Assembly (NCBI GenBank): GCA_010909165.1
Contig: VJWM01000011.1
Span: 1,364,001-1,428,000 of the forward strand
DNA length: 64,000 bases
Source: Anthoceros angustus
Lineage: Eukaryota; Plantae; Anthocerotophyta
Direction: 5' to 3'
Positions 10,936 to 64,000 of this stretch are shown here, piece by piece (within the stretch, counting starts at the first letter, position 1; the number at the start of each line of letters is the position of its first letter). The position numbers and the translations under genes are program-made. Under the pieces are notes generated by a model. The model made no database searches. It had not been told where the DNA came from and worked only from the letters and a program-made list of their open reading frames with translations.

Positions 10936-13900
10936 ATGGCCACAGCGAAGGCTGAAGCTTCTTTTCTTCTCTTTGCACGTCACTGGCTTTCAGGCGGCAC
11001 CCAACAAATTGGTGTGTGTACAGGGATTCTACGAGGAGCTCCTGCTAACCTCATTTTAGGGAGTCGACCCCTGGCAAGCAAAGCCTCCAGGTGCAGCAGT
11101 GTAAGGAGCCCAGCACTTCCACCTCTGAGGAAGTATGTGGGTAGGGACGGGTTTTCCAGCGATGGTCGTTGCCAGGAGCAGGAGCACTTGTGGCATCAAT
11201 TTTTTCTGGACCCTACCATGTGGTGGGACAACAGACGAGATAAGAAGAGCTCCCGTTCTCCTGACTTCCGGCGAAAGGGGTCCGGCGAGGTGCTGTGCTT
11301 AAACAACATGTTTAAGCCAGCTTGGGTTGACGAGCAGCTCATTTCCTTGGATTTGCAGATGGGCCATTGTGCCAGTGTAAGGAGCCCAGCACTTCCACAT
11401 CCGATGGGCCATGGTGCCTCTCCTTCCGCGTCCAGCTCTCAGGATAAGCCTGAACCTGGGAGGCGTGCAGGATCGGAAATGGGCGTCGTTACTGCTGTTA
11501 CCGTGAGCACGTTATGTCAGCAGGGGAAGCTTTCTGAGGCTGTTGGAGCCCTGGAATCTCTGGCGCACACAGACTCTCCCATTTCTCAGTCTCTGTTCTA
11601 CACTGTGCTGAAACTGTGTACAGCCAAGAAGGATTTGGTTGTGGGGCGACGAGTTCATGATCTCATTGTCAAACTTGGATACGAGTCGAGTGCATACTTG
11701 GGGAACCATATCTTGCGCATGTATGCTGGTGGAGGTAGGCTAGAGGAGGCCATGGATGTGCTCACCAGGGTGGGCAAACCAGATGCCTTCATGTGGTTTT
11801 CCATAATATCCGCATATGCCAAGCAAGGGAAACCTAATCAGGCCATACAACTGTATCATGAGATGCGTAGGTCAGGAGTTAAGGCGGATGCTCACGTCTT
11901 TGTAGCTGCCCTTCAGGCTTGTGCATTTGCTGCCGACTTGGAATCTGGCAGAAAAGTGCACCATGATGTGGTGCAGAGTGGCATTCCTACTAACTTGTTT
12001 GTTGGCAACTGCCTGGTGGACATGTATGCAAAATGTGGCCAACTGAAAGATGCACGCCAGGTTTTTGACAGCATGGCCACAAAGGATGTGGTGACATGGA
12101 CTGCCCTGATATCTGGGTATGCAAAATGTGGTGAACTGGAAGACGCACGCCAGGTTTTTGACAGCATGAACAGAAAGGATGTGGTGACATGGAATGCCCT
12201 GATATCTGGGTATGCACAGCAAGGACGCGGCCACGAGGTGCTTGTTCTGTATGGACAAATGGAGCAGGAGGGCCTGATTTTGGCTGACCATGTTACTTTT
12301 GCTTGCCTTCTGAAGGCCTGTGCAAGCACTGGTGCCTTACAGAAGGGCAGGCAGCTGCACTCACAGATTGTGGAAAAAGGACTGCTGGATGACGTAGTGT
12401 TAGGCAACTGCCTGGTGGACATGTATGCAAAATGTGGTGAACTGGACGACGCACGCCAGGTTTTTGACAGCATGAACAGAAAGGATGTGGTGACATGGAC
12501 TGCCTTGATATCTGGGTATTTACAGGAAGGGCTGGGCCAAGAGGCGCTTGCCGTGTATGGACAAATGGAGGAGGGGGGCCTTATTTTGGGTAACGATGTT
12601 ACTTTTGCTTGCCTTCTGAAGGCCTGTGGAAGCACTGGTGCCTTACAGAAGGGCAGGCAGCTGCACTCACAGATTGTCAAAAGGGGACTGCTGGATAACG
12701 TCGTGCTGGGCAACTGCGTGGTGGACATGTATGCAAAATGTGGTGAACTGGAAGATGCCCGCCAGGTTTTTGACAGCTTGGCTGGTGACATGGAATGCCC
12801 TGATTGCTGGGTATGCACAGCAAGGACTCGGCCAAGAGGCACTTGTTGTGTATGGACAAATGGAGCAAGAGGGCCTTATTTTGGCTGACCATGTTACTTT
12901 TGCTTGCCTTCTGAAGGCCTGTGGAAGCACTGGTGCCTTACAGAAGGGCAGGCAGCTGCACTCACAGATTGTGGAAAGAGGACTGCTGGATAACGTAGTG
13001 GTGGGCAACTGCCTGGTGGACATGTATGCAAAATGTGGTGAACTGGAAGACGCACGCCAGGTTTTTGACAGCATGAACACAAAAGATGTGGTGACATGGA
13101 CTGCCCTGATATCTGGGTATGGTACTTGTGATGAAGGTCATAAGGCACTAGCTTGTTTTGAGGAGATGTTGGTTGCCGGTATTCAGCCTAATGATGTTAC
13201 TTTTACTTGCCTTTTAGTAGCATGCAGTCATGGGGGACTGGTCCACGACGGTCGCAAGCACTTTGATTCCATGGCTGAACAGCATGGCATCAAACCTACT
13301 CTTGAGCATTATAATTGCATGATTGATCTTCTTGGGCGTGCCGGCCATTTAGATGAGGCAGAGAAGATGCTATTATCATGCGAGGGCCAAACTAATGTTG
13401 TGGGATTGACGTCTTTGTTGAATGCCTGCAAAAGTCACGGGATATAGAGAGGGCGATGTGGTGTTTTGAAAGCATTGTTAGGCTGGACCCCAGGAGGCCC
13501 CCGCATATGTGCTCATGGCAAATGCCTACGCAGATGCAGGTAGGTGGACCGATGTAGACAGGATTGAAACACAGAGAACGGTAGCAGGAGCTAACAAGAA
13601 ACCTGCAGTGGCGACCATTGAGGTGAATAAGCAGGTACATAGATTTTTGGTGGGAGAAAGGAGAGAGGATATTGCGCTTAAGGTAGAGAGCACGAATGCA
13701 CGTCTGAAGCAGGAAGGAGGCCACGTACCTCACACAAAGTTGGTGTTGAAGCCAATGTCTGAGAAGGAAAAGGAAGATGTGCTTTGTGGGCATGCTGAGA
13801 AGCTAGCTCTGGCGTTTGGTCTCTTGAACACTCCGAGTGGGACACCCCTAGTGGTAACGAAGAATCTACGCATGTGCAGTGACTGCCACAGTTCCACGGA

Positions 13901-14000
13901 GATCATGTCAAGGCTTGAACAAAGAGACATTGTGGTAAGGGATGGGTACCGTGTGCATCGATTCGCAGCTGGTTGTTGCAGTTGTAAAGGTCGACCGTGA
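10936..14000 (+). CDS. PLS-class PPR protein with E1-E2 and DYW:KP (GRP-ending) deaminase-like domain, candidate U-to-C editing factor; three frameshifts as assembled
   Basis: About 17 PPR motifs (L-S-P triplets, P2-L2-S2), E1/E2, KKPAVATIEV, HAEKLA, CSDCH, HRF..GCCSC and C-terminal GRP*. Frameshifts: 11-bp deletion at ~12782 and 1-bp losses at ~13440 and ~13494. Confidence 0.9.
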
Positions 14001-14182
14001 GATTAATGGAGTACTACCCAGAGCTCAAGTGTGTACGCTGAAGAAATTTTCTTCTTTCTAGGGTGAATGTGCTGGGTTAACTCCATCCCAGTCCAACGGA
14101 CACAGGAACGTGACATCCCTCTGGTGAAATATTCTAGACCGATTTAATTGGGAGATCGTTGCAACAGTCCGAAATCACTCCC

Positions 14183-15611
14183 TTGCAGAAGGGCAGGCAG
14201 CTTCACTTACAGATTGTGGAAAAAGGACTGCTCCGACGTAGTGTTAGGCAGCTGCCTGGGGGACATGTATGCAAAATTTGGTGGACTGGAAGACGCACGC
14301 CAGGTTTTTGACAGCATGAACAGAAAGGATGGGGTGACATGGACTGCCCTGATATCTGGGATGTTAAGGAAGGGCTGGGCCAGGAGGCGCTTGTTGTGTA
14401 TGGACAAATGGAGGAGGGGGGCCCTATTTTGGGTAATATGAACAGCAAGGACTCGGCCAAGAGGTGCTCGTTGTGTATGAACGAATGGAGCAGGAGGGCC
14501 TGTTTGTGTCCGACCATGTTACTTTTGCTTGCCTTCTGAAGGCCTGTAGAAGCCCTGGTGCCTTACAGAAGGGCAGGCAGCTGCACTCACAGATTGTCAA
14601 CAGGGGGCTGCTGGATAATGTAGTGCTGGGCAACTGCGTGGTGGACATGCATGCAAAATGTGTTGAACTGGAAGATGCACACCATGTTTGTGACGGCACG
14701 AACAAAAAGGATGTGGTTACATGGAATGCCCTGATATCTGGGTATGGTACTTGTGATGAAGGTCACAAGGCACTAGCTTGGTTTGAGGAGATGTTAGTTG
14801 CCGGTATTCGGCCTGATGATGTCACTTTTACTTGCCTTTTAGCAGCATTCAGTCATGAGCAAATGGTCCAGGAGGGTCGCAAGCACTTCGATTCCCTGGC
14901 TAAACAGCATGGCATGAAACCAACTATTGAGCATTACATTTGCATGATTGATCTTCTTGGACGTGCAGGCCATTTAGATGAGGCAGAGAATATGCTGTTG
15001 TTATGTGAGGGCCAATGTATCTTTTTTGAATGCCTGTGAAAGTCATGGCCATCTAGAGAGGTCGATTTGGTGTTTTGAAAGCATTGTTAGGCTGGACCCC
15101 CGGCAGGTATCCGCATGTGTGCTTTCGGCCAATGCCTATGCAGATGGACGCAGGTGGACCGATGTTGACAGGATTGAAACACAGAGAACAGTGGCAAGAG
15201 CTAACAAGAAACCTGCAGTGGCGACCATTGAGGTGAATAAGCAGGTACATAGATTTCTGGTGGGAGAACGAAGAGAGGATACTGCGCTTAAGGTAGAGAG
15301 CACGAATGCACGTCTGAAGCAGGAAGGAGGCCACGTACGTTGTACGAAGTTGGTGTTGAAGCCACTGACTGTGTGAGAAGGAAAAGGAAGATGCGCTTTG
15401 TGGGCATGCTGAGAAGCTAGCTCTGGCGTTTGGTCTCTTGAACGCTCCAAGTGGGACACCTTTTGGAACCAAGAATCTACGCATGTGCAGCGACTGTCAC
15501 AGTTCCGCGGAGATCATGTCAAGGCTTGAACAGAGAGACATTGTTGTAAGGGATGGGTTCCGTGTGCATCGATTCGCAAATGGTTGTTGCAGTTGCAAGG
15601 GTCGACCGTGA
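14183..15611 (+). pseudogene. Tandem 5'-truncated paralogue of the DYW:KP(GRP) PPR gene
   Basis: Same P2-L2-S2-E-KKPAVA-HAEKLA-GRP* sequence with multiple frameshifts and no N-terminus. Confidence 0.88.
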
Positions 15612-16186
15612 GAATGATGGAGTACTACCCAGTGCTGAAGACTGTGTGTGGGCCAGAAAATATTTCTTTTCTCTTGGGGGTGAATGTTGCTTAACGGCTC
15701 CACCTTCGTCCAACCTGGGACATGGGTACGCAACGTTAACGCTGCCCTACCTCTGATAATGAAGAGAGATGGTCAGTATCGACTGAAATTTGTTTCTGGA
15801 GTATAACAGGGCTCCATAAAGGGAAGAATTACAGAGCAGAAAACCGCAGCAGGGGATGAGCAGCGCAAGCCCGACAAGGGTTGCAAGGCAGGAGGCACTA
15901 GCAGGTAGCTAGCATCAGCATACACATACGGACATTCCTAACAGAAGCAGAACAACCAAAGACTAGCCCAGCTGCCCAAGCCAGGAACTAATGTCGAGAA
16001 GGACTTTCTGGATCTTGACTTCCATAAAGACTACTGGAGGGGAATTCTTGCACGTGACTGCATCTCAGATGTGGCAGACACTGGATATCACAATTGAGAT
16101 ATGAAGGTCCAATGAACATATAGCACGTCGCATTGCCTGTAGGATTTTCTTTGAAACTCTATCAAGATCCTACCCCAAACACAATA

Positions 16187-26815: not shown

Positions 26816-28149
26816 CTCCTGTAGAAGGAGGGCACTCGTGCATATATCTCACGTGTCACAGCAACGCAGTACCATGTACTGCCTATCAACACACCCTTCG
26901 GGTCTCCAGCATTCGCTTGGTTTTCCGGTATCTTTTCTTCCAGGACTTCTGGGAGACCTTTACTCCACTGCTGGCAAAGAGTCTCGCCTTGAACACCAGG
27001 CAAGGTCAGCAATGACACTCATGTGAGCAGCCCGGCAGAGGAATAATAACAGGCCTGTACCTCGGATTCATCTACCCCAACAGAGTGAACTGCTAACAAG
27101 TTCTCCCCAAGGAATTTTATGTTGTCAAGGTGAGTAACACGTCCCGTGTTGCACATTCCGAGTGTCCCCCACCCACTCGTTCTCGAATGGTATCTCAGCC
27201 ACATGCTGTTCCGCGATGTCAAGATCAGTGGACGGAACCTCAATGTGGAATCCAGGCAACCAACAGTCCATGGGAGTCTGCCGGTACCATGTGGATTCCA
27301 GTGTTATTCTGATCCGCGGCCTGTTTCGTCCGGAACAACAGGTTGTCAGTGGCGTTCAGAATCTGCCATCTGCCTTAGGGCCAAACAGAGAATCCTCCTT
27401 TGGCCGAACAGAGCTGGTCCTTGGGATTACAGACTGCTGCAGGCCAACTGCGATGGACTGACCTGTGGTGTTGGAAGTGAAAGGTACTGGAGTCCTGTGC
27501 ATGGCTTGTGGCACAATTCATGAGTCGTGGTAAGCAAAAGGCACTGGAGTCCTTTGCATGGCTGGTGGCACAATTCATGACTCGTCCTTCTGTCACACGG
27601 AAACTCGGTGCCGTATGTGATGCTGCGTACATCCCATCTAAGGAGGGTTAGCTTGGACAGGCATTGGGCTGGTCGACTTAGAGGTTTGGGCCATGAAGTT
27701 CTATTCCAGGGATGTAGACGTCCAACCACCTGTGAGAGCTAGGTCTTGTATTCCAAGGAAGGCCCTCCTGAGGATGCGCTAGTGTAAAACACAGCACATT
27801 GTCAAAACAGGGCTCAGCCTGGAGTTGAACACTTCTTTTCGGACCTTAATGGCCTGCTGCCCTTCAGGACGTATAAGCAGAAGCAAGAAGGAGGTGTCCA
27901 GCCGCCGCATATTAGGCACACCTGTTCTTGGGGTGCTATAAGCGTGCAGGAGCTTAGCAGACCTGCGGCACAATTCATGGGATAGGCTCGTCCATGCGTG
28001 TGTGAGCTGCGAGGGAATTTGAGAGGCTGGAGATGTGTTTCATAGAACAGTGTGTAAGAAATATGGCCAGTCTCTGAGAGCTGGTTTGAAATTGCGCAGG
28101 AGGGTCACAATGTTCAAGGCGTACCCAACAAGAGTGTGCCGAATCACAG

Positions 28150-29750
28150 CACCAGGACGTACAGGCATTGACTTTACGAACCTATGTAAAGGGTGCCTCA
28201 TCCAGTTGGCCTGCACGGCCCAGGACATCTCCCATGTACATATTTGTAGTGCTGCACCGTCGGGGTGATGCCGTAGTACGTGAGAATACTAGAATGGGCT
28301 GCCTCGGACTCCATATAATCACATCGTGTGATTAGATCGATACAGACAAGGCAGCCATGGAACACTCTCTGAGCATCCTGTAAGCTGCCACACTTCGCAT
28401 ACATGCTTACCAAACTGTTGCCGATAAACACATCACCTTGATGGCCTCGTTCTCTGATTTGCACATAAAGCTGCTTCCCCTTCTCCAAAGCTGGGGATCC
28501 CACATTTCCACATGCCCGCAGTAGGGACAGAAGTGTCAGATATCCTGCTCATTTTCTTGCAGAGCTCTGTAAAGATGAAGCGCCTCTTGGCCCTTGCCCT
28601 GCTGGGAATACAGAAATATCATGGTATTCCACGTCACCACATCTTTTGTCCCGAGTGCATCAAATACTCTTCGGCAGTCTTCCAAGCTGCCACACTTTGA
28701 ATACATGTTTACCAAACCATTGGCTACGAGCATATCAGTTTCATGTCCTCCTTCGTGAATTTGTGTACGAAGCAGCTTCCCCTTCTCCAATGCAGGGGGA
28801 CCCACTCCGGCACAAGCCTGCAAGAGGGACACAAATGTCACGGAATTGGGTATAGCAACGCCTTCTTCTTGCATGACACCATAGAGGTAAAGGGTTTCTT
28901 GGCACCATCCATGTTAAGATACCCTGCAATTAGAACGGTCCATGTTACCACATCTTTTCGGACAAGGCCATCACACATTCTCTGTCCATGCTCCCACACT
29001 TTGCATACATGTTTATCGAACTGTTTGCGACAAACACATCAGCCTGATATCCTCGTTCCCTACTTTGTGCATGGAGCTTCTTCCCCTTCTCCAAAGCTGG
29101 GCTGCCTACATTTGCACATGCTTGCAGGAGGGACACAAACGCCACAGCATTCGGTACAGCGATGCCTTCTGCTTCCATTGTACTGTAGAGACGAAAGCCT
29201 TCATTTTGCATACATGTTTACCAAGCTATTCCAGACAAACAAGTGAGGCTCCGCCCCAATGGCCAACACATCAGAATGCACCTGCTTCCCCTTGCACAAG
29301 CCTGAAGGGCTGCCACAAACACATGCCCATCCGGCTCGACACTTGACCTGCCCATCTCATAATACAGTTCTAAGGCCTGCTTGTCCTCTCCATTTTTAAC
29401 ATGCGCAGAAATTATGGAAGACCACATAAAGGCATTTGGTTCGGCAACCATGGTGAACACATCCATCGCGTCTTGCAACCTACCATGCGAGGTATACATC
29501 CGCAGTATGTGGTTGCACAGGAACGTATCCAACTGGTACCCCTTTTCACGATCAAAGAATGGAGGCGGCGACCCGAAATAAGATATTTCTTCAACAAACA
29601 CTCCTTCAGGACAGTACAGAAAAGAGCTGTGTTAATAAAACACTCTGTCTGCACCATCACTCCCAAAGCCTCGACAGCCTCAGCGAGGTAACCCTCACGA
29701 CACAGCCTGCGAACAAATCTCAAACGGAGGAATGGTCTCTTGGAACTATT
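28150..29750 (-). pseudogene. Degraded PLS-class PPR pseudogene
   Basis: FVRRLCREGYLAEAVEAL N-terminus, NHILRMY, repeated MYAKCGSL and DVVTW. Many deletions and frameshifts. Confidence 0.85.
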
Positions 29751-29799: not shown

Positions 29800-31995
29800 T
29801 TCTATCGGCTACCAAAAACCTATGTACGACACGTTCACCGTCTGCCCACCAGCTCTGACCGGCCTGCTTCCGAGCCCTGATTCTCCTTCTCATGGCCTGC
29901 ATCTTCCTTGGCCGCTCCCACATCTGCCGCACACACTCTGTGAGCACTTTCCAGGCTGCCACATTTCGCATGCAGGTTCACCAAACTGTTGGCTACAAAG
30001 ACATCGGTTTCATGACCTCCTTCTTGGATTTCTTAATGAAGCTGCTTACCCTTCTCCAGAGCCCGGGTGCCAACACTAGCACATGCCTGGAGGAGGCACA
30101 CAGATGTCACAGAATTGGGTACAGCCATGCTCTCTTCTTGCATAACACTGTAGACAAGAAGGGCTTCTTGGCCCATGCCCTGCTGGGAATACCCTTCTAT
30201 CATGACATTCCATGTCACGATGTCTTTCTGAGCAAGTCCGTCAAATAGTCTGTGTGCATCTTCCAAGCTGCCGCACTTGGCGTACATGTTTTGGAGAAGC
30301 AGATGCATGCTCAAATCAAAGAACGAGGACATCAAGATGGCATGTTTGTAGCCAGTAGTTTCTAAAGCTGGGCTGCCCACACTGGCACATGCCTGAAGAA
30401 GGCAAACAGATGTCACACATTTGGGTGAAGTGATTCCTTCTGCTTGCATACCACCGTAAAGAAGAAGGGCTTCCTGGCCGATGCCCTGCTGGGAATACCC
30501 CGATATCAGGGCATTCCACGTAACCACATCTTTTTGGCCAAGTCCATCAAACACCGTTTGAGCTTCTTCCAAGCTGCCACACTTTGCATACATCTTAACC
30601 AAACTGCTTTCTACTAACACATCAGCTTGAAAACCTTGTTCTCTAATCTGTGCATGACGCTCTCTCCCTTTCTCCAACGCTAGGGTGCCCATGCTTGCAC
30701 ATGCCTGCAGGAGGCACACTAAAGTTATGGAGTTGGTTGCATTGATCCGCTCTTCTTGCACAGCTGTGTATAGATGAAGGGCTTCTTTGCCCATGCCCTG
30801 CTGGGAATATCCTGCGATCATGGCAGTCCACGTCACCACATCTTTTTGACCAAGTCCATCAAACAGTCTCTGGGCATCCTCAAGGCTGCCACATTTCGCA
30901 TACACGTATACCAAACTGTTGGCCACAAACACGTCTCCTTCTTGCCCTCCCTCTACAGTCTGCTCGTGAAGCCGCTTTCCCATCTCAAGGCTGGTGTGCC
31001 CACACTAGCACATGCTTGCAGAAGGCAAACAAATGTCACAGGATTGGGCACAGCGATACCTTCTTGTTGCATAACACTGTAGAGGTGAAGGGCTTCTTGG
31101 CCCATGCCCTTCTGGGAATATCCTGCGATCAGGGCCGTCCACGTCACCACATCTTATAGACCAAGACCGTCAAACACTCTTCGAGCATCCTCTAGGCTGC
31201 CACATTTTGCATACATTGTTACCAAACTGTGTTGCCCACACACTGGCACATGACTGTAGCACGCACACAAATGTGACAGAATCGGGTACAGCGATCCCTT
31301 CTCCTTGCATACAACTGTGAACACTAAGGGCTTCTTGGCCCATGCCCTGCTGGGAGTACCCTGCAATCATAGCATTTCACGTCACCACATCCTTCTGCAC
31401 AAGACCGACAAAGACTCTTCGTGTTTCTTCTAAGCTGCGACACTTTGCATACAGGTTCGCCAACCCGCTGCCTACAAACGCATTGGCTTGGTGTCCTCGT
31501 TCTGTGACTTGTGCGTGGACCTGCTTCCCCATCTCCAAAGCCGGAGTGCCCACACTGGCACATGCCTGTAGGAGGCAGAGGAATGTCACAGCATTGGGTA
31601 CCGCCCTGTAAAGAGAAAGGGCTTCCTGACCCCTGCCTGCTGGGAATACCCTGCAATTAGAGCAGTCCATGTCACCACATCTTTCTGCCCAAGTCTGTCA
31701 GACATGTCCACGAAGCAGCTAGAGACAAACAAATCAAGCTGAGCGCCCTGCTGCCCAGCTTTCAAGTCAGACCCCCTTGCACAAGCCTGCCTGCTTGTCT
31801 TGTCCGTGTTTCACATGCGCAGAAATTATGGAATGCCACAAGAAGGCACCTGGTTCGGCAACCATGGTGACCTACCACAAGGAGGCATCTGGTTCGGCAA
31901 CCATGGTGAACACATCCATTGCGTCCTGCAACGTGCCATGCGAGGCGACTCATGGACGTGGCGACCCAGAACAAGAATTCTCTTCGCCACACATT
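29800..31995 (-). pseudogene. Degraded PLS PPR pseudogene (paralogue of 46917-49441) ending in E+/PG-box-like remnant; 5' end truncated
   Basis: PLS triplets of ~306 bp and C-terminal MRRRIRARKQAGQSW..VVHRFLVADR. Contains a 66-bp inversion (30296-30361), a ~39-bp tandem duplication (~31850-31905) and deletions. Joined to unrelated sequence at 31995. Confidence 0.87.
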
Positions 31996-32285
31996 CCATC
32001 GTGCTCGGTGATGTCGGTGCCCCGATTGTCGTTCTGAAGGAAAACGAGGAGTGTGGAGAAGATTTGTTGGCAGGGTACGACCCGCAAGGGCTGCTCACCT
32101 GGCAGCTGAGTTCGGTGGGGAGTGGAGTGAGCAGGAGTGAGCAGAGCATGCTGACATTCTACGGGGCCTGGCCAATGCGGAAGAATGTCGTCTAAAACTA
32201 AAGCAACATGACTTGAAAGCGTGACAAATGCCACGAGAGTCACATTCGCCCTAGGCTCTAGGTATAGCTCTCATCCAGATCCTAA

Positions 32286-32490
32286 TACAAGGAGATTCAA
32301 GCCTTCATTCCTCCTACAAGGACATTCAAGCCAGCATTCCTCCTACAAGGACATTCAAGCCAGCATTCCTCCTACAAGGAGATTCAAGCCAGCATTCCTC
32401 CTACAAAGAGATCCAAGTTATCATTCCTCCTACAAGGAAATTCAAGCCAGCAGGCCAGCATTCCTCCGCCAAGGAGATCCAAGCCAGCAT
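32286..32490. repeat. 29-bp minisatellite (about 7 units) downstream of the dirigent gene
   Basis: CAAGGACATTCAAGCCAGCATTCCTCCTA variants; duplicated at ~61515-61725. Confidence 0.88.
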
Positions 32491-32647
32491 TCCTCCTACT
32501 GCTCTGAAGCACCGGGCAGGCAGACGCTTCAACCTCCACCAAGGGAGTACAACCTACAACCGGTGCGTCACTCAGAAGTGCAAGAGCTCAGCTCAGAGTT
32601 AGTCAGCACATCACTGACGACATGACATGGAGGCAGCCAGCCGACAT

Positions 32648-33212
32648 TCAGGATCCATAACCACCGTAATAGACGGAATTAGTGAAGTTAAAGACGGCGG
32701 TGTAGTTGACAATCTTGACGACGGAAAGCGAGCCCAGCCTCGGGCGAGCCTGAAGTCCCCGGTGCCTCCGACGATGGCGATCTCCCGCACCTTGGTACGG
32801 GTGTAGTCGTGGCCGCGGTACGAGAGAGTACTGTCCGAGGTGAATCCGCTCTTTTGTTGAAGATGGCGGTGAAGACGAACTCCAAAGCGGGGCGCCCACC
32901 AGGCCGTCCACACGTAAAGGCCCTTGGCCTTGCCAATAGTCGTGGAACTGGGGTCGGGGCCCTGCGTCAATGGGTCGTCCATCACCACCATGCCGCCCAC
33001 GAGCGGCTTCCTTTCGAGGAAAGGTTTCGGGGATGCCTTGCAAGGAGGCACCGCGAAAAGGCAGTAGCATTAGGCGCCAGGAGATCGTCGTGCATGAAGT
33101 AACTGAATTCCACGAAATTCTCTTTTCCCGCCCAGCACGGCTGCACCCAGGATCCGCTCGCCAAAAGGAGGAGGAGAGCTGTGGTCGCCATCGCCATCGC
33201 CCCCACCCGCAT
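32648..33212 (-). CDS. DIR: Dirigent protein, intronless (frameshifted in this copy, probably a sequence error)
   Basis: Near-identical to the intact ORF at 61873-62445, differing by 1-3 bp deletions. Confidence 0.8.
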
Positions 33213-34251
33213 CCGATGCCTCTTGACGCCCAAGAAAGTGCAAGTGCACCCACTTCTCATGCCTCTGTCGACGCTCAAGGAGTAGGCTCTCTGGGCTCAG
33301 CCAATGCAGCTTTAATGGACCAGCTGCAGCTGCGGGACGTGCTTGTGACTCGAGGACTAAAGCGGCATATACGACCAGTCACAGTGAACTGCCACACTCC
33401 AAACTCGCTTTTGGTGTCCGAGACATCCTCATCCTCATCCTCACCCTCATGCATGTGGTGTCATGCATTTCCTGTCTTGTTGCATTTCCTGTGTTGCTGC
33501 ATTTCCTGTCTTGTTGCATTTCCTACCTTTCTGGAACTTTTCCTTCCGTTTATGTCTTATGTTGCTCTCACGCTGCATGTTGCTCTCATCTGTTGACCAT
33601 GTATGTTATGTTGCTCTGTTCACCATGGTCTGTATTGTTTTCTGGCTTTGTTGCAAGCAGGTCGGGCCATGGAGGAAGCTGATTGGGGATGCAGCTGCTC
33701 TAGTCCTAGTCCCACCCCAACGTCTTCTGGAAAGCGAGGGAGTTCACCGCCAAGCCTAGTGCCTGGTGATGAGATGAGCCCATGTTCGGGAAATCCTCGT
33801 ACTGGACACAAGCTGTGTTCACGAAGCCTTCCCTGTATGTGACTGCCACCTGCGAAGTCGTCCAACTTGGTATGTGGAACCCCTTTCTTCATCAGGTGAC
33901 TCGAAGTCAACCATGAGCATGGGTGGAAGGAGGTTGCAGGTGCCAATGCTACATTCTCCCAGTGCAGCTGACGGTCCAGGTGCAGGTGGCGATGTCCAGA
34001 TGAGGTGCAGGTGCCAATGCCACTTTCTGCGGGTGCAGTCCAGCCTCGCTATTCTGCAGCAATTTCCCATGGCCAGGTCCTGAGCACAGCTTAACTGCCC
34101 GCTGTCCAGCAGCTTTGTAGGCACTGCCATTCACCATCCAGGTCAGTCCACCAACCCTGGCCTGGCTGCTGTGAAGGCTGTGCGCGTAGCGAGGACGCGT
34201 TTGTGAGCAGCCTAGTCTTGTCCATGCACCTCCGACAGCGGTCCCTGGACG

Positions 34252-35517
34252 ATGGCCACAGCGAAGGCTCAAGCTTCTTTTCTTCTCTTTGCACGTCATT
34301 GGCTTTCAGGCGGGACCCAGCAAATTCCTGCGTGCACAGGGATTCAGCGAGGAGCTCCCACTAACCTCATCTTAGGAGTCGACCCTGGCAAGCAAAGCCT
34401 CCAGGTGCAGCAGTGTAGGAGCCCAGCACTTCCTCTTCTGAGAAAGTGTGTGGGTAGGGACGGGTTTTCCAGCGATGGGCGTTGCCAGGAGCAGGAGCAC
34501 TTGTGGCAACAATTTTCTCTGGACCCTACCATGTGGTGGGACGACAGACGAGATAAGAAGAGCTCCCGTTCTCCTGACTTCCGGCGAAAGGGGTCCAGCG
34601 AGGTGCTGTGCTTAAGCCAGCTTGGGTTGATGAGCAGCTCATTTCCTTGGATATGCAGATGGGCCATGGTGCCAGTGTGAGGAGCCCAGCACTTCCACAT
34701 CCGATCGGCCCATGCTGCCAGTGGAAGGAGCTCAGCACTTCCACATCCGATGGGCCATGGTGCCTCTCCTTCCGAGTCCAATCGGAAATGGGCGTCGTTA
34801 CTGCTGTTACCGTGAGCACGTTACGTCAGCAGGGGAAGCTTTCTGAGGCCGTTGGAGCCCTGGAATCTCTGGCGCACACAGACTCTCCCATTTCTCAGTC
34901 TCTCTTCTACACAGCGAACAAGGATTTGGTTGTGGAGCGACGAGTTCATGATCTCATTGTCAAACTTGGATAAGAGTCGTGTGCATACTTGCTCACCAGG
35001 GTGGGCGAACCAGATGCCTTCATGTGGTTTTCCATAATATCCGCATATGCCAAGCACGCGAAACCTAATGAGGCCATACAACTGTATCATGAGATGCGTA
35101 GGTCAGGAGTTAAGGCGGATGCTCACGTCTTCGTAGCTGCCCTTCAGGCTACCGACTGCATTTGCTGCCGACTTGGAATGTGGCAGAAAAGTGCGCTTAA
35201 GGTAGAGAGCACGAATGCCCGTCAGAAGCAGGAAGGAGGCCAGGTACCTCATACAAAGTTGGTGTTGAAGCTAATGTCTGAGAAGGAAAAGGAAGATGTG
35301 CTTTGCGGGCATGCTGAGAAGCTAGCTCTGGCGTTTGGTTACTTGAACACTCCGAGTGGGACACCTCTGGTGGTAACGACGAATCTACGCATGTCAGTGA
35401 CTGCCACAGTTCCACAGAGATCATGTCAAGGCTTGAACAAAGAGACATTGTGGTAAGGGAGGATACCGTGTGCATCGAATTGCAGATGGTTGTTGCAGTC
35501 GTAAAGGTCAACCGTGA
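34252..35517 (+). pseudogene. Internally deleted paralogue of the 10936 PPR gene (5' region fused to the C-half of DYW:KP, ends GQP*)
   Basis: Same MATAKA start and WWDDRRDK..PDFRRK motif. At ~35185 it jumps from the equivalent of 11959 to that of 13678 (TGC overlap). In-frame stop at ~34971. Homology to copy 1 extends upstream (33655 vs 10280) and downstream (35715 vs 14200). Confidence 0.88.
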
Positions 35518-36965
35518 GAATAATGGAGGACTACCCAGAGCTCAAGCGTGTACTGTGAGGAATTTTGCGTTTGTGGGTGAATGTGCTTGGTTAACTCCAT
35601 CCCTGTCCAAACGGAGACACCAACATGACATACCTCCGGTGAAATATTCTAGACAGATTTAATTGGGAGATCGTGGCGACAGTCCGAAATCTCTTCCTTC
35701 CAGAAGGACAGGCAGCTGCGGAAGAACAAAAAAGGATTGCTCGATGACATAGTAGTATTAATGCGCAATATTCGGGCCGCCAGAGACATGCGATTTCTCC
35801 AAGTTCAACACGGTTGCCATCCACTGCACGACAATATCTGTCTCCAGACCTGCGCACGAAAGAGCAGGCCAGGTTTTGTGCTCCATGTGCAACAGACACC
35901 GGGTGCACGCTTAGCTTTCCACACATTCCTGCACCAGAATCAGCAACGTAACCTAAAGTTGTCTCCTGAGGTTTGCACCTCTGTTTCCTCTGAATCTGTG
36001 CTACGCGAGATCCAAAGGACCTGCGTCCTTGAAGGTCGTTCCTCTACTGTACCTGGATGACTGGGTCTATCTGCCTGATGCAATGCAGCATCCCTGCCGT
36101 ACCGTTTTAGGCAGACCGTGTTTCATCAGGCAAGGAAAAGTGCAGCAGGGCCACAGGAGACAGCTGAGGAGAGAGCCTGGAAGCGTGTGCGTACATATGT
36201 ATAGTTGCTGTTTAAAGGCGCGGGTGGGCCTTCCCTTCGGACACGGCAAACGAGACCAGCGGCAGAACGAAATTGTCGTTACCAGCAGCAGCAGCTTTGG
36301 ACTGGAGGCCGGTAGGGCACACTTGCCGGTGCCACGCCACGCCATCCCACGCCAGCCCAGGCCACGCCGTGTCCGAAGCTTGGCACACTGGGCAATGCGG
36401 GCAACACAGCTTCACTACAGATACTGACTGCACACACAGACTTCCACATTCTGGTCCCGAAATCCTCCCCCTTCCAATCATCCGGCGGCGCCTGTCCCAC
36501 AGACCACTTCGACGGCCCACAACATTTGCCCACACGAGACGCGTATCACTCCTCGGCTATGGCTGCCCAGGTGAGACTCTGCGCGGGAGCCCACAAAGCT
36601 GAGAGGCTTTTAGTACTACTGGGCAGCTTGCCGGGAACAGTAGCGCATTGCTCTCGTCGTGCCGGCAGCTCTCATTGTCGGGTACACGAGAAGCTATGTT
36701 TTTTCTTTTTTGTCTTTTCGGAAATGCGGGTGGTCCAAGTGTAGCATTTTCGTGTGAGTCAGGATTTGTTTTGCTCCAGCTAACTGGCAAGCGCCAAGTT
36801 GGTGGGCACGGTCTGATGGTTGTTGTATCTGGCGCAGTCCAACGAGATGGTTGGGGAGAATGGAGCTTCTGGCAATCATTTTGGTCAGCTGCGATTTGCA
36901 GGAACTTTGAGTTTGGTACGAAAGCTCTTACTCAGGGGTTGAAAATGTGTTCTTGCACGAATGCA

Positions 36966-46440: not shown

Positions 46441-46916
46441 TTGAGCTGCTTATTTTGTTCTTTGCTTAATGAGAGATGTGCTAAATGCTTCTTAGCCAAA
46501 TGGACACACATCTATACAACGTTATTAAGCATCCGGTGCTTAGATCGATACTTAGATAGGGTGCCTAAAGGAGTGGATGCTCTTAGTGCAAGTAGCTTAG
46601 GCACACCATGGTACAAGTATCAAGTATACAAACGCCGTTATTAAGCATCCTGTGCTTAGATCGATACTTAGATGGGGTGCCTAAAGGAGTGGATGCTCTT
46701 AGTGCAAGTAGCTTAGGCACACCATGGTACAAGTATAAGTGCCATGACGGAAGTTCTCTGTGGACTATAATAGAAGTCTCCTTTCCTTCTTCTTTCATTT
46801 AACCGAAGAGAGCGGGTCAGTGGCCAGGTAGTGTAACTGAAGGGAGTTGTGGGTCAGTGTATTTCATGTCCAGGTAGTGTAGTGGCGTGTGCCCGATACA
46901 TTCATATTCTCAGCTC

Positions 46917-49441
46917 ATGCACCGAGCAAATGGGCGTCTGGATTGGTCGGGCAAAGGGCAGCAGGAGCCAGTGCTGGGACAGTTATCGTTGCGCGAGCGA
47001 ATTGGTGGGTTAAGACGTAGACTACCAAGGTCTCCTGCCCAATTGAATTCAAAGAGGCCACGGTTGAGAAACAAGCAGTCTGGGACGTGCTCATTAGCAG
47101 CAAAGCCAGCTCGTGGAAGAGGATATGTTGCTGCAGATGGCCCTTCCAGCGAGGGTCGACGGCAGGAGCCTTGTGGCGACAATTCTTTCTGGGACCCCAC
47201 GCTTTGGTGGGACAGCAGGCAAGATAAGCAGAGCGACCGTTGGCCTAACTTCCGGCACAAAGAGTCCCAGGAGGTCCTCTGGTTGAACAGCCTCCAAGCC
47301 GGGTTGGGTGGATGCCCAGCTTGCTGCTCTGGATGTGGAGGTCGGGTGATCCTGGCCCTCGCAGGCCTGCAGGATACGAAGTGGGCGTGACTGCTGCATC
47401 CGTGGCCGAGCTGTGTGGTGAGGCGACCTCGCTGAGGCTGTTGAGGCTCTGGGAGTTCTGGTGCAGGCAGACTGTCCTGTTGCCAAATCTCTGTTTTATA
47501 CTGTCTTGAAGAAATGTGTGGCGAAGAGGAATCTTGTTCTGGGTCGCCACGTCCATGCCTTGATGGTGAGAAGAGGGTACCAGTCGGACACGTTCCTGTG
47601 CAACCACATTCTAAGAATGTATGCCTCGCATGGCACGTTGCAGGACGCAATGGATGTGTTCTCCATGGTTGCCGAACCAGATGCCTTCTTGTGGTCTTCC
47701 ATAATTTCTGCGCATGTGAAACACGGACAAGACAAGCAGGCCGTAGACCTGTATCAGCGGATGCGCAGGTCAAGTGCGAGGGCAGATGGCATGTGTTTGT
47801 GGCAGCTCTTCAGGCTTGTGCAAGGGGTCTGACTTGAAAGCTGGGCAGCAGGTGCTGCTGATGTGTTGGCTAGTGGCACTCAGCTTGATTTGTTTGTCTC
47901 TAGCTGCTTGGTGGACATGTATGCCAAGTGTGGCAGCTTGGAGGATGCTCAGAAAGTGTTTGACGGACTTGGGCAGAAAGATGTGGTGACATGGACTGCT
48001 CTGATTGCAGGGTATTCCCAGCAGGGCAGGGGTCAGGAAGCCCTTTCTCTTTACAGGGCTATGCAAGAAGAAGGCATCGCGGTACCCAATGCTGTGACAT
48101 TCCTCTGCCTCCTACAGGCATGTGCCAGTGTGGGCTCTCCAGCTTTGAGATGGGGAAGCAGCCCACGCACAAGTCAGAGAACGAGGACACCAGGCCGATG
48201 AGTTTGTAGGTAGCGGGTTGGTGAACATGTATGCAAAGTGTTAGTTAGAAGAAGCACAAAGAGTCTTTGACGGTCTTGTGCAAAAGGATGTGGTGACGTG
48301 GAATGCTATGATTGGGGTACTCCCAGCAGGGCATGGGCCAAGAAGCCCTAAGTGTTTACAGTTGTATGCAAGAAGAAGGATCGCTGTACCCGATTCTGTC
48401 ACATTTGTGTGCGTGCTACAGGCATGTGTGGGCAACCCAGCTTTGAAGATGGGAAAGCAGCTTCATGTCCAACTTAGAGAGCAAGGACATCAAGCTGATG
48501 CCTTTGTAGCCAACAGTTTGGTAAACATGTATGCAAAGTGTGGCAGCCTAGAGGATGCTCGAAGAGTGTTTGACGGTCTTGGTCAAAAAGATGTGGTGAC
48601 GTGGACGGCCCTGATCGCAGGATATTCCCAGAAGGGCATGGGCCAAGTAGCCCTTCACCTCTACAGTGTTATGCAACAAGAAGGTATCGCTGTGCCCAAT
48701 CCTGTGACATTTGTTTGCCTTCTGCAAGCATGTGCTAGTGTGGGCACACCAGCTTTGGAGATGGGAAAGCAGCTTCACGGGCAGATTGTAGAGGGAGGGC
48801 ATGAAGGTGACGTGTTTGTGGCCAACAGTTTGGTATACATGTATGCGAAATGTGGCAGCCTTGAGGATGCCCAAAGACTGTTTGATGGACTTGGTCAAAA
48901 AGATGTGGTGACGTGGACTGCCATGATCGCAGGATATTCCCAGCAGGGCATGGCCAAAGAAGCCCTTCATCTATACACAGCTGTGAAGAGCGGATCAATG
49001 CAACCTGACTTTTGTGTGCCTCCTGCAGGCAAGCATGGGCACCTAGCGTTGGAGAAAGGGAGAGAACTTCATGCACAGATTAGAGAACAAGGTTTTCAAG
49101 CTGATGTGTTTGTAGGAAGCAGTTTGGTCAACATGTATGCAAAGTGTGGCAGCTTGGAAGAAGCTCAAACGGTGTTTGATGGACTTGGCCAAAAAGATGT
49201 GGTTACGTGGAATGCCATGATATCGGGGTATTCCCAGCAGGGCATGGGCCAGGAAGCCCTTCTTCTTTACGGTAGTATGCAAGCAGAAGGAATCACCTCA
49301 CCCAATTGTGTGACATTTGTGTGCCTTCTTCAGGCATGTGCCAGTGTGGGCAGCCCAGCTTTAGAAGTGGGGAAGCAGATGCATGCTCAAATCAAAGAAC
49401 GAGGACATCAAGATGGCATGTTTGTAGCCAGTAGTTTCTAA
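46917..49441 (+). CDS. PLS-class PPR protein with N-terminal PDF-like WW motif, truncated by the fold-back; frameshifted as assembled
   Basis: Arg-rich N-terminus, LWRQFF.DPTLWWDSRQDKQSDRWPNFRHKESQEVLWL, then ~6 PLS triplets, ending at the hairpin centre. Confidence 0.8.
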
Positions 49442-51660
49442 AGCTGGGCTGCCCACACTGGCACATGCCTGAAGAAGGCAAACAGATGTCACACATTTGG
49501 TGAAGTGATTCCTTCTGCTTGCATACCACCGTAAAGAAGAAGGGCTTCCTGGCCGATGCCCTGCTGGGAATACCCCGATATCAGGGCATTCCACGTAACC
49601 ACATCTTTTGGCCAAGTCCATCAAACACCGTTTGAGCTTCTTCCAAGCTGCCACACTTTGCATACATCTTAACCAAACTGCTTTCTACTAACACATCAGC
49701 TTGAAAACCTTGTTCTCTAATCTGTGCATGACGCTCTCTCCCTTTCTCCAACGCTAGGGTGCCCATGCTTGCACATGCCTGCAGGAGGCACACTAAAGTT
49801 ATGGAGTTGGTTGCATTGATCCGCTCTTCTTGCACAGCTGTGTATAGATGAAGGGCTTCTTTGCCCATGCCCTGCTGGGAATATCCTGCGATCATGGCAG
49901 TCCACGTCACCACATCTTTTTGACCAAGTCCATCAAACAGTCTCTGGGCATCCTCAAGGCTGCCACATTTCGCATACACGTATACCAAACTGTTGGCCAC
50001 AAACACGTCTCCTTCTTGCCCTCCCTCTACAGTCTGCTCGTGAAGCCGCTTTCCCATCTCCAAGGCTGGTGTGCCCACACTAGCACATGCTTGCAGAAGG
50101 CAAACAAATGTCACAGGATTGGGCACAGCGATACCTTCTTGTTGCATAACACTGTAGAGGTGAAGGGCTTCTTGGCCCATGCCCTTCTGGGAATATCCTG
50201 CGATCAGGGCCGTCCACGTCACCACATCTTATAGACCAAGACCGTCAAACACTCTTGAGCATCCTCTAGGCTGCCACACTTTGCATACATGTTTACCAAA
50301 CTGTGTTGCCCACACACTGGCACATGACTGTAGCACGCACACAAATGTGACAGAATCGGGTACAGCGATCCTTCTTCTTGCATACAACTGTAAACACTTA
50401 GGGCTTCTTGGCCCATGCCCTGCTGGGAGTACCCCAATCATAGCATTCCACGTCACCACATCCTTTTGCACAAGACCGTCAAAGACTCTTCGTGTTTCTT
50501 CTAAGCTGCGACACTTTGCATACAGGTTCGCCAACCTGCTGCCTACAAACGCATTGGCTTGGTGTCCTCGTTCTCTGACTTGTGCGTGGGCTGCTTCCCC
50601 ATCTCAAAGCTGGAGAGCCCACACTGGCACATGCCTGTAGGAGGCAGAGGAATGTCACAGCATTGGGTACCGCCCTGTAAAGAGAAAGGGCTTCCTGACC
50701 CCTGCCCTGCTGGGAATACCCTGCAATCAGAGCAGTCCATGTCACCACATCTTTCTGCCCAAGTCTGTCAGACATGTCCACGAAGCAGCTAGAGACAAAC
50801 AAATCAAGCTGAGCGCCCTGCTGCCCAGCTTTCAAGTCAGACCCCTTGCACAAGCCTGCCTGCTTGTCTTGTCCGTGTTTCACATGCGCAGAAATTATGG
50901 AAGACCACAAGAAGGCACCTGGTTCGGCAACCATGGTGACCTACCACAAGGAGGCATCTGGTTCGGCAACCATGGAGAACACATCCATTGCGTCCTGCAA
51001 CGTGCCATGCGAGGCGACTCATGGACGTGGCGACCCAGAACAAGATTCCTCTTCGCCACACATTTCTTCAAGACAGTATAAAACAGAGATTTGGCAACAG
51101 GACAGTCTGCCTGCACCAGAACTCCCAGAGCCTCAACAGCCTCAGCGAGGTCGCCTCACCACACAGCTCGGCCACGGATGCAGCAGTCACGCCCACTTCG
51201 TATCCTGCAGGCCTGCGAGGGCCAGGATCACCCGACCTCCACATCCAGAGCAGCAAGCTGGGCATCCACCCAACCCGGCTTGGAGGCTGTTCAACCAGAG
51301 GACCTCCTGGGACTCTTTGTGCCGGAAGTTAGGCCAACGGTCGCTCTGCTTATCTTGCCTGCTGTCCCACCAAAGCGTGGGGTCCCAGAAAGAATTGTCG
51401 CCACAAGGCTCCTGCCGTCGACCCTCGCTGGAAGGGCCATCTGCAGCAACATATCCTCTTCCACGAGCTGGCTTTGCTGCTAATGAGCACGTCCCAGACT
51501 GCTTGTTTCTCAACCGTGGCCTCTTTGAATTCAATTGGGCAGGAGACCTTGGTAGTCTACGTCTTAACCCACCAATTCGCTCGCGCAACGATAACTGTCC
51601 CAGCACTGGCTCCTGCTGCCCTTTGCCCGACCAATCCAGACGCCCATTTGCTCGGTGCAT
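49436..51660 (-). pseudogene. Inverted mosaic copy of the PPR gene (right arm of palindrome)
   Basis: 49436-50240 matches 30361-31165. 50240-51060 carries the deletions and duplication of the 31-kb copy. 51060-51660 is the reverse complement of the left arm. Confidence 0.88.
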
Positions 51661-63481: not shown

Positions 63482-64000
63482 ATGGCCACAGCGAAGGCTC
63501 AAGCTTCTTTTCTTCTCTTTGCACGTCATTGGCTTTCAGGCGGGACCCAGCAAATTCCTGCGTGCACAGGGATTCAGCGAGGAGCTCCTGCTAACCTCAT
63601 CTTAGGGAGTCGACCCCTGGCAAGCAAAGCCTCCAGGTGCAGCAGTGTAAGGAGCCCAGCACTTCCTCTTCTGAGAAAGTGTGTGGGTAGGGACGGGTTT
63701 TCCAGCGATGGGCGTTGCCAGGAGCAGGAGCACTTGTGGCAACAATTTTCTCTGGACCCTACCATGTGGTGGGACGACAGACGAGATAAGAAGAGCTCCC
63801 GTTCTCCTGACTTCCGGCGAAAGGGGTCCAGCGAGGTGCTGTGCTTAAGCCAGCTTGGGTTGATGAGCAGCTCATTTCCTTGGATATGCAGATGGGCCAT
63901 GGTGCCAGTGTGAGGAGCCCAGCACTTCCACATCCGATCGGCCCATGCTGCCAGTGGAAGGAGCTCAGCACTTCCACATCCGATGGGCCATGGTGCCTCT
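63482..64000 (+). pseudogene. Duplicate 5' part of the 34252 PPR pseudogene
   Basis: Same MATAKAQ start and WWDDRRDK..PDFRRK motif. Confidence 0.85.

What the first reader, a model, noticed from the sequence alone, without database searches (positions are those of the whole stretch)
11185..11340. PPR editing factors fused to an OSB-type PDF (ssDNA-binding-like) motif
Seen: LWHQFFLDPTMWWDNRRDKKSSRSPDFRRKGSGEVLCL..KPAWVDEQL sits between a transit-like peptide and the first PPR. A diverged version (WWDSRQDK..PNFRHKESQEVLWL, 47170-47330) heads a second PPR family whose paralogue ends in a PG-box-like E+ rather than KP. Known: WWDNR..K..PDFKHK..GEALWL is the PDF motif of organellar OSB ssDNA-binding proteins. 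Inference: an editing factor with an extra nucleic-acid-binding module, which could tether editing to nucleoid ssDNA or R-loops co-transcriptionally or melt RNA structure. A WW-type N-terminal extension may already be noted in hornwort PPR surveys, but I know of no functional test.
Basis: partly seen in the sequence, partly recalled or inferred. Interest (0 to 1): 0.75.

Follow-up and report, generated by a model that had tools for sequence, protein, structure and literature searches.

The report
OSB-type PDF domain on PPR editors
[quoted passage not shown] I found no paper describing the pairing, but all five copies in this window are broken and the module's job is untested.

Summary
At 11176-11364 (+), between a transit-like presequence and the first PPR, lies a 63-aa module that matches the PDF domain of OSB proteins. 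A profile built only from angiosperm OSB PDF regions scores it 73 bits (E 4e-24). BLASTP gives 47-49% identity to both PDF repeats of named OSB1 and OSB3. A profile of the window's copies retrieves 523 proteins (E<=1e-3), mostly OSB-type.

AlphaFold2 folds it confidently (pLDDT 90.5) as helix, three short strands, helix. No solved fold resembles it.

The window holds exactly five copies in two families. Four are split by a frameshift inside the module. The fifth (A1) has an intact module, but its PPR-E-DYW:KP (GRP-type) body has at least three frame breaks.

Intact PDF-PPR proteins exist elsewhere: ferns, a lycophyte, moss-like contigs, and one intact PDF-PLS-E-DYW:KP gene. So the fusion is old and not special to U-to-C editors. 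A PDF-like module also occurs in phage replication/recombination modules.

Most likely it is an accessory single-stranded nucleic-acid grip 5' of the PPR footprint; this is inferred. No paper found links PDF with PPR, but Gerke 2020 and Gutmann 2020 were not readable.

This scan has already reported the same fusion several times on other DNA of this genome.

The parts
10936..11175 (+). A1 presequence (transit-peptide-like N-terminus)
   Evidence: ORF start ATG at 10936. First 75 aa hold 10 Ser, 10 Ala, 9 Leu and 7 Arg but only 1 Asp and 1 Glu. Organelle targeting is inferred from composition only.
11176..11364 (+). A1 PDF domain, the only uninterrupted copy in the window.
   Evidence: Translation. 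OSB-only profile: 73.2 bits, E 4e-24, positions 3-65 of 66. BLASTP: 47% identity to Populus OSB1 and 49% to Euphorbia OSB3. AF2 pLDDT 90.5. One near-invariant Trp is replaced, giving LCL where the family has LWL.
11365..11500 (+). Ser/Pro/Gly-rich linker between the PDF and the first PPR
   Evidence: Translation. No Pfam hit in this stretch.
11500..13444 (+). A1 PLS-class PPR array, broken by a 10-nt deletion near 12765-12780
   Evidence: Pfam PPR, PPR_1, PPR_2 and PPR_3 hits in two ORFs in different frames. Frame change shown.
13491..14000 (+). A1 E motif and DYW:KP deaminase domain of the GRP subgroup, in a third frame
   Evidence: Pfam E_motif and DYW_deaminase, 2.9e-34. KPAVA box at 13599-13613. 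HAE and CSDCH signatures, C-terminal GRP. Two further 1-nt frame breaks at about 13445 and 13480, in G and C runs.
34489..34664 (+). A2 PDF, split by a 13-nt deletion. N half is 34489-34614; C half is 34611-34664 in another frame.
   Evidence: The deletion is flanked by TTAA microhomology when compared with A1 DNA. The gene body downstream has a large internal deletion and a broken DYW.
63722..63897 (+). A3 PDF, with the same 13-nt deletion as A2. The gene runs off the window end.
   Evidence: It lies in a 98.9% identical duplicate of 31224-34767.
47160..47346 (+). B1 PDF (PNF variant), split by a 2-nt deletion. N half is 47160-47288; C half is 47293-47346.
   Evidence: 33.7 bits, E 8.6e-12. 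More frame changes occur before the first PPR. The gene is cut at about 49441 by an inverted junction.
51231..51417 (-). B2 PDF, an inverted near-identical duplicate of B1 with the same frameshift
   Evidence: Part of the 99.5% inverted duplication 41530-47557 / 57063-51020.
11097..11404 (+). 32-nt direct repeat (11097-11128 and 11373-11404, 94% identical) bracketing the A1 PDF-coding stretch
   Evidence: Both copies encode SVRSPALP.

Best explanation
The stretch encodes a genuine PDF domain. This is the roughly 55-60 aa module that, as one to three C-terminal copies, gives plant OSB proteins their single-stranded-DNA binding. Here it is fused between an organelle presequence and the PLS-type PPR array of hornwort-type DYW:KP (GRP subgroup) RNA-editing genes.

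Shown: homology, a confident compact fold, the domain order, and purifying selection between the two families. The same architecture occurs intact in ferns, a lycophyte and one other KP-type gene. All five copies in this window are frame-broken, so this locus is a graveyard of recently duplicated pseudogenes.

Inferred: in intact members the PDF is an accessory, sequence-unspecific grip on single-stranded nucleic acid. PPR arrays bind RNA in parallel, N-terminus to 5' end. A PDF on a flexible linker would therefore lie just 5' of the PPR footprint. There it could hold the upstream strand unfolded and raise affinity or on-rate. It is not needed for catalysis.
For: Homology:
- A profile of the window's copies retrieved 523 proteins at E<=1e-3 and 154 at E<=1e-10.
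- The hits include named OSB1 and OSB3, with a weak Pfam SSB domain plus C-terminal motif copies.
- An OSB-only profile scores A1 at 73.2 bits, E 4e-24.
- BLASTP gives 47-49% identity to both repeats of OSB1 and OSB3.
- The family's invariant W, D, R, K, F and P residues are present in A1.

Fold: AF2 pLDDT 90.5, pTM 0.75, arranged helix, three short strands, helix.

Architecture: Pfam finds PPR, E_motif and DYW_deaminase downstream. A KPAxA box, HAE, CSDCH and a GRP end are present. GRP is a hornwort DYW:KP subgroup (PMC9478123).

Selection: for the PDF, A1 against B gives dN 0.31 and dS 1.18, a ratio of about 0.26.

Intact relatives:
- P0093, a 753-aa single ORF with PDF, PLS, E and DYW ending in GRP.
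- Adiantum, Ceratopteris, Pteridium and Diphasiastrum PPRs with one to three N-terminal PDFs.

Nucleic-acid role:
- Reviews report that the PDF of AtOSB1 suffices for ssDNA binding (PMC6963530; PMC4166229).
- A PDF-like module also ends a phage protein that sits between an exonuclease and a DnaB helicase, primase and RusA.

Accessory, not catalytic: designer PLS-DYW:KP proteins without a PDF edit U to C (PMC9478123).

Broken copies.
Against: - No binding, localisation or editing data exist for any PDF-PPR protein.
- OSB1 and OSB2 are reported to prefer ssDNA over RNA (PMC4166229). That fits a DNA tether better than an RNA grip.
- A1 has Cys in place of a near-invariant Trp, and B has PNF in place of PDF.
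- Recent copies drift neutrally: A1 against A2 gives dN/dS of about 1.2, though on only 6 differences.
- Two of A1's frame breaks sit in homopolymer runs and could be assembly errors. The 10-nt, 13-nt and 2-nt deletions could not.
- The parallel-binding geometry rests on established PPR knowledge, not on a test here.
Confidence: 0.5

Rival explanations
1. Nucleoid tether. The PDF binds single-stranded DNA at transcription bubbles, R-loops or replication intermediates. This parks the editing factor on the organelle nucleoid, so editing happens co-transcriptionally.
For: OSB PDFs are reported as ssDNA binders with preference over RNA (PMC4166229; PMC6963530). The PDF-like module also occurs in a phage DNA replication/recombination module.
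Against: No localisation data exist. Editing by PPR-DYW proteins works in E. coli and human cells without such a module (PMC9478123). The fusion is found on only a subset of PPRs.
Confidence: 0.22
2. Protein-interaction or oligomerisation module. The PDF recruits partners such as OSBs, other PDF-bearing proteins or a trans-acting deaminase, or it multimerises the editor. It does not bind nucleic acid.
For: AtOSB2 is reported to be a tetramer (PMC6963530). The many conserved aromatic residues could form an interface.
Against: The only biochemical statement available assigns ssDNA binding to the PDF itself. No interaction data exist.
Confidence: 0.13
3. Chance or convergent look-alike: a lineage-specific N-terminal extension unrelated to OSB PDF.
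For: Pfam has no model, so the family scan was blank. The word-index search was also blank.
Against: E 4e-24 against an OSB-only profile over the full domain. Reciprocal retrieval of named OSBs. 47-49% pairwise identity.
Confidence: 0.01

Closest known systems
PDF motif/domain of plant organellar ssDNA-binding proteins (OSB1-4; Zaegel et al. 2006 as cited in PMC6963530 and PMC4166229; PMC13393729)
   Same: The same roughly 55-60 aa module with the same invariant residues: W...F..P..WWD.R..K....PDF.HK....LWL....P.WV..L. Identity to OSB1 and OSB3 repeats is 47-49%.
   Different: In OSBs the module is C-terminal to an SSB-like OB fold and often repeated. Here a single copy is N-terminal to a PPR array and there is no OB fold. 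The PPR-linked copies share a KPxWVD signature after the third strand. They group together in a poorly resolved tree.
Hornwort PLS-class PPR DYW:KP proteins, GRP subgroup (candidate U-to-C editing factors; PMC9478123, citing Gerke 2020 and Gutmann 2020)
   Same: PLS repeats, E motif, DYW deaminase with a KPAxA box, HAE/CxDCH signatures and a C-terminal GRP.
   Different: These genes carry an extra N-terminal PDF domain that the papers I could read do not describe. The copies here are frame-broken.
PDF-PPR proteins in public proteomes: Adiantum capillus-veneris KAI5076972.1 and KAI5061374.1, Ceratopteris richardii KAH7429238.1, Diphasiastrum complanatum KAJ7570437.1, Pteridium EP00250_P017103, Logan P0093 and P0005
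   Same: The same order: presequence, one to three PDFs, then a PPR array.
   Different: They are annotated only as hypothetical or PPR proteins. Several lack a DYW domain. P0093 is the only KP/GRP-type match and shares about 44-69% identity with A1.
Phage/prokaryote-like proteins with a C-terminal PDF-like module (IMG/VR L003 ORF 5542-6096, L004, P0143, P0145)
   Same: The same WWDNR...NPKAPD(F/Y)KHK...WL core. They score 46-80 bits against the OSB-only profile.
   Different: The N-terminal domain is unrelated and uncharacterised. The L003/L004 copies end after the third strand. The genes sit among exonuclease, DnaB helicase, primase and RusA genes.

Membership tests
PDF domain (as in OSB proteins) | About 50-aa motif with a conserved Pro-Asp-Phe signature and flanking WWD.R / LWL / P.WV residues | tested here: met
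   A1 has PDF at 11260-11268, WWDNR at 11221-11235 and KPAWV. All invariant columns of the 32-sequence alignment are present. Deviations: LCL for LWL in the A family and PNF for PDF in the B family.
PDF domain (as in OSB proteins) | Significant match to a profile built only from PDF regions of OB-fold-bearing OSB proteins | tested here: met
   73.2 bits, E 4e-24, profile positions 3-65 of 66. Several profile rows belong to clusters named OSB1.
PDF domain (as in OSB proteins) | Binds single-stranded DNA | not testable with these tools
   Only literature statements for AtOSB1 and AtOSB2 are available.
OSB protein family | Central SSB-like OB-fold domain N-terminal to the PDF(s) | tested here: not met
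   Pfam finds only PPR/TPR-type families in ORF 10936-12885 and no SSB domain. OSB-type hits show a weak PF00436 match. So this is not an OSB; it shares only the module.
PLS-class PPR DYW:KP editing factor, GRP subgroup | PLS PPR array followed by an E motif and a DYW deaminase domain | tested here: met
   Pfam PPR families, E_motif (3.7e-07) and DYW_deaminase (2.9e-34) are present, but spread over three reading frames.
PLS-class PPR DYW:KP editing factor, GRP subgroup | KPAxA in place of the PG box, an HxE...CxxCH zinc site, and C-terminal GRP | tested here: met
   KPAVA at 13599-13613. HAEKLA at 13791, CSDCH at 13875, and the protein ends in GRP. The subgroup definition is from PMC9478123.
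PLS-class PPR DYW:KP editing factor, GRP subgroup | Uninterrupted coding sequence (a functional gene) | tested here: not met
   A1 has a 10-nt deletion near 12770 and 1-nt breaks near 13445 and 13480. A2/A3 and B1/B2 are frameshifted inside the PDF.
PLS-class PPR DYW:KP editing factor, GRP subgroup | U-to-C editing activity | not testable with these tools
   Activity has been shown only for designer KP proteins (PMC9478123).

The most novel reading that the evidence does not exclude
PDF-PPR proteins form an old, functionally distinct class of organellar RNA-processing factors in seedless land plants. Their ssDNA-binding module, borrowed from the OSB/phage recombination world, physically couples RNA editing to the DNA template at nucleoid ssDNA or R-loops. 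Editing by these factors would then be obligatorily co-transcriptional.
Probability: 0.15. Interest if true: 0.8.

Novelty: new variant of a known kind. Interest (0 to 1): 0.55.

Why it matters
PPR editing factors are usually described as a transit peptide, a PPR array and E/DYW domains. A conserved extra single-strand-binding domain on a subset of them, from hornworts to ferns, would add a module to that picture. It also gives a testable handle on two questions: how natural editors find or hold their substrates, and whether editing is coupled to the DNA template.

It matters for people who build U-to-C and C-to-U editing tools from natural KP and PG proteins. It also bears on OSB biology. The PDF domain is described as restricted to green plants and to OSBs, yet it appears here on PPRs and in phage-like proteins.

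For this particular window the practical value is low. Every copy is broken, so experiments should use intact genes from elsewhere.

Tried and rejected
- Pfam scan of the motif: no family, because Pfam has no PDF model.
- Word-index protein search with the motif region of the 650-aa ORF: 2 candidates, none scored. The same search with the Adiantum PDF found only 3 close fern relatives. This tool is too insensitive for a 55-aa motif, so the blanks mean nothing.
- Foldseek against PDB (best E 3.4) and VIA-align against 48,161 chains (best Z 4.2): no credible structural relative.
- PHROGs and Pfam on the phage-like PDF proteins and a neighbour: no family.
- Viral scan with P0145: nothing. Bacterial/archaeal genome scan with the PDF alignment: nothing confirmed.
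- Exact look-up of the 650-aa ORF to name the organism: not on record. 'Hornwort-type' therefore rests on the GRP-type DYW:KP tail.
- Tree of 129 PDF segments: too few columns. 69 of 125 inner branches are unresolved, so a single origin of the PPR-linked PDFs is neither shown nor excluded. In that script only, the split A2 and B1 halves were joined with X at the break.
- Reading Zaegel 2006, Gerke 2020 and Gutmann 2020: not held.
- Introns as an explanation of the frame breaks: rejected, because the breaks are 1-13 nt indels relative to paralogues.
Full report
**1. What is in the sequence**

It lies in ORF 10936-12888. The order along the ORF is:
- A presequence of about 80 residues, rich in Ser, Ala, Arg and Leu, with only two acidic residues in the first 75.
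- The motif, at 11176-11364.
- A Ser/Pro/Gly-rich linker.
- PPR repeats (Pfam PPR, PPR_1, PPR_2, PPR_3).

A regex scan and two profile scans of all six frames find exactly five copies in two families:
- A1: 11176-11364 (+).
- A2: 34489-34664 (+).
- A3: 63722-63897 (+).
- B1: 47160-47346 (+).
- B2: 51231-51417 (-).

**2. Is it the OSB PDF motif?**

Pfam has no model for it, and a word-index search was blank. I therefore aligned the window's own copies (alignment A1) and ran the profile against 1.84 billion representative proteins. This gave 523 hits at E<=1e-3, 154 at E<=1e-10 and 16 at E<=1e-30.

Most hits are 250-500 aa proteins with one to five motif copies in the C-terminal half. Some also show a weak Pfam SSB domain upstream. 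Source names include 'protein OSB1, mitochondrial' (Populus, Beta, Ananas, Drosera, Phtheirospermum), 'organellar single-stranded DNA binding protein 3' (Euphorbia) and 'Primosome PriB/single-strand DNA-binding'.

For the reverse test I built a profile only from the PDF columns of 11 angiosperm OSB-type proteins, with no window or PPR rows. Its scores on the window are:
- A1: 73.2 bits, E 4e-24, over positions 3-65 of 66.
- A2/A3: 45.1 bits.
- B1/B2: 33.7 bits.

BLASTP of A1 against Populus OSB1 and Euphorbia OSB3 aligns it to both of their PDF repeats at 45-49% identity (best E 6e-18 and 9e-17). In a 32-sequence alignment the invariant columns are W10, D22, R24, K27, F35 and P52 (A1 numbering within the 69-aa query). 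The near-invariant ones are F14, P17, W20, W21, P33, D34, K38, L44, W45, W54 and L59. All are present in A1 except W45, which is Cys. The homology claim is settled.

**3. Fold**

AlphaFold2 on that alignment gives mean pLDDT 90.5 and pTM 0.75: helix 2-15, short strands at 20-22, 35-37 and 43-44, helix 54-66. Foldseek against PDB (best E 3.4) and VIA-align against 48,161 chains (best Z 4.2) find no credible relative. A weak or missing match is not proof of a new fold. It does mean that no solved structure informs the mechanism.

**4. The genes**

A1 continues through a PLS array. It ends with an E motif and a DYW deaminase (Pfam 2.9e-34) carrying a KPAVA box, HAE, CSDCH and a C-terminal GRP. 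This is the GRP subgroup of hornwort DYW:KP proteins, the candidate U-to-C editors (PMC9478123).

As assembled, the gene needs at least three frame changes:
- A 10-nt deletion near 12770, inside a PPR.
- A 1-nt break near 13445, in a G run.
- A 1-nt break near 13480, in a C run.

The other copies are also broken:
- A2 and A3 lack 13 nt between the LCL and KPAWV parts of the PDF. The deletion is flanked by TTAA microhomology, so the start codon and first half of the PDF are out of frame with the rest.
- A2 also has a large internal deletion of the PPR array and a broken DYW.
- B1 and B2 lack 2 nt at the same loop and have more frame changes before the first PPR.
- B1 is cut at about 49441 by an inverted junction.

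The indels are shared by 98.9-99.5% identical segmental duplicates. They therefore predate those duplications and are unlikely to be random read errors. Only A1's two homopolymer breaks could be assembly errors. The locus is best read as a cluster of recently duplicated, decaying PPR pseudogenes.

**5. Selection**

Across the PDF, A1 against B gives dN 0.31 and dS 1.18, a ratio of about 0.26. This indicates purifying selection over the long divergence of the two families. A1 against A2 gives a ratio of about 1.2 on only six differences. That is compatible with recent neutral drift but has no statistical power.

**6. The fusion elsewhere**

Among the best 150 hits, seven are PPR proteins with one to three N-terminal PDFs:
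- Adiantum capillus-veneris KAI5076972.1 and KAI5061374.1.
- Ceratopteris richardii KAH7429238.1.
- A Pteridium aquilinum transcript.
- Diphasiastrum complanatum KAJ7570437.1.
- Two Logan-assembly proteins, P0093 and P0005.

P0093 is an intact 753-aa single ORF with a PDF, PLS array, E motif and DYW with KPAVA and a GRP end. It is the closest match to A1, at 44-69% identity by segment.

Short N-terminal fragments in which a PDF runs straight into a PPR come from metagenome contigs. Longer members of one such cluster give Pfam PPR hits. Another cluster includes Sphagnum jensenii models, but these give no PPR Pfam hit at their annotated length.

Several of the fern and lycophyte proteins have no DYW domain. 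So the fusion is old and is not specific to KP-type editors.

Single-PDF proteins score lower than multi-PDF OSBs. The 373 hits I could not list probably hold more of them, so this count is a lower bound.

A maximum-likelihood tree of 129 PDF segments is mostly unresolved. It places the window's copies with P0093 and P0005 in a PPR-only group (SH-aLRT 86), next to the fern PPR PDFs. A single origin is neither shown nor excluded.

**7. Outside plants**

P0143 and P0145 lie on short, gene-dense, prokaryote-like contigs. Two IMG/VR viral contigs encode a 184-195 aa protein ending in a PDF-like segment. Against the OSB-only profile, P0145 scores 79.7 bits, P0143 61.0 bits, and the viral ORFs 46-47 bits.

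In L003 that gene lies between a PD-(D/E)XK-type exonuclease and a DnaB-like helicase, a primase and a RusA resolvase. This is the usual place for a phage SSB or annealing protein. It supports a DNA-strand-handling role for the module. It also contradicts review statements that PDF motifs are confined to green plants (PMC4166229).

**8. Mechanism**

What is shown:
- Homology to the PDF domain.
- A confident compact fold.
- The N-terminal position on a flexible linker.
- Long-term constraint on the sequence.
- Recurrence of the same architecture in several plant lineages.

From the literature:
- The PDF of AtOSB1 suffices for ssDNA binding (PMC6963530).
- OSB1 and OSB2 prefer ssDNA to dsDNA or RNA (PMC4166229).
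- Designer PLS-DYW:KP proteins edit U to C in bacteria and human cells without any PDF (PMC9478123).

From established knowledge of PPR-RNA complexes: the array binds RNA in parallel, so an N-terminal add-on sits 5' of the footprint.

My best inference, at about 50%, is an accessory and unspecific single-strand grip that raises affinity or keeps the upstream RNA open. The reported ssDNA preference and the phage context favour it. A protein-interaction role is third, at about 13%.

**9. Novelty**

Full-text searches found no paper connecting the PDF domain with PPR proteins. The term combinations tried were:
- 'PDF motif' with OSB1 or with pentatricopeptide.
- 'PDF domain' with OSB.
- OSB, PDF, PPR and hornwort.
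- WWDNR.
- pentatricopeptide, OSB, N-terminal and single-stranded DNA.

A 2026 survey of 182 OSB genes does not mention PPR or hornworts (PMC13393729). The Anthoceros angustus genome paper discusses the PPR expansion without it.

The three most relevant papers (Zaegel 2006, Gerke 2020, Gutmann 2020) are not held, so prior mention cannot be excluded.

The scan's own index shows the same fusion was reported and followed up at least eight times on other DNA of this genome, with the same conclusions.

**10. Verdict**

The functional reading is plausible but untested. The window's own copies are dead. I class it as a new variant of a known kind: a new domain architecture built from two known modules.

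Noticed in passing
L003:5542-6096 (IMGVR_UViG_3300002835_000706); L004:512-1096; P0143; P0145: Phage/prokaryote-like proteins end in a PDF-like module (46-80 bits against an OSB-only profile). In L003 the gene sits between an exonuclease and a DnaB-like helicase, primase and RusA. The PDF is therefore not confined to green plants, contrary to what reviews state.
   Followed up: partly
window 11097-11128 and 11373-11404: A 32-nt direct repeat (94% identical, spacing 276 nt, both copies encoding SVRSPALP) brackets the A1 PDF-coding stretch. It may be a trace of a local duplication or of a lost second PDF unit.
   Followed up: no
window 11295-11320, 34605-34620 and 47285-47295: Both families carry independent frameshifting deletions in the same short loop of the PDF, between the LxL strand and KPxWV. 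In the A family it is 13 nt, flanked by TTAA microhomology; in the B family it is 2 nt.
   Followed up: partly
window 30292-64000: A mosaic of very recent segmental duplications: 41530-47557 is inverted at 57063-51020 (99.5%), 31224-34767 is direct at 60460-64000 (98.9%), 36399-39384 is inverted at 60473-57508 (99.3%) and 30292-31995 is direct at 49368-51064 (98.1%). Together they carry the PPR gene pieces.
   Followed up: no
window 14148-15640: A second GRP-type E/DYW:KP tail (KPAVA at 15209, HAE at 15405, CSDCH at 15486, ends in GRP). It is 88% identical to 12812-14029 and has only a few PPRs and no N-terminal part. It is also frame-broken.
   Followed up: partly
P0001 (Kingdonia uniflora KAF6142360.1), P0002, P0004, P0012, P0027 (Coptis chinensis KAF9616283.1): Some angiosperm gene models hold very long PDF arrays (13 copies in P0001, 8-10 in others). 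One model fuses three PDFs to a kinesin motor. These may be real expansions or merged gene models.
   Followed up: no
window 27300-28420 (-): The B-like PPR gene on the minus strand (28.2-31.9 kb) ends in a decayed P2/L2/S2-like tail with many stops. Its only PG-like remnant is at 27817-27840.
   Followed up: partly
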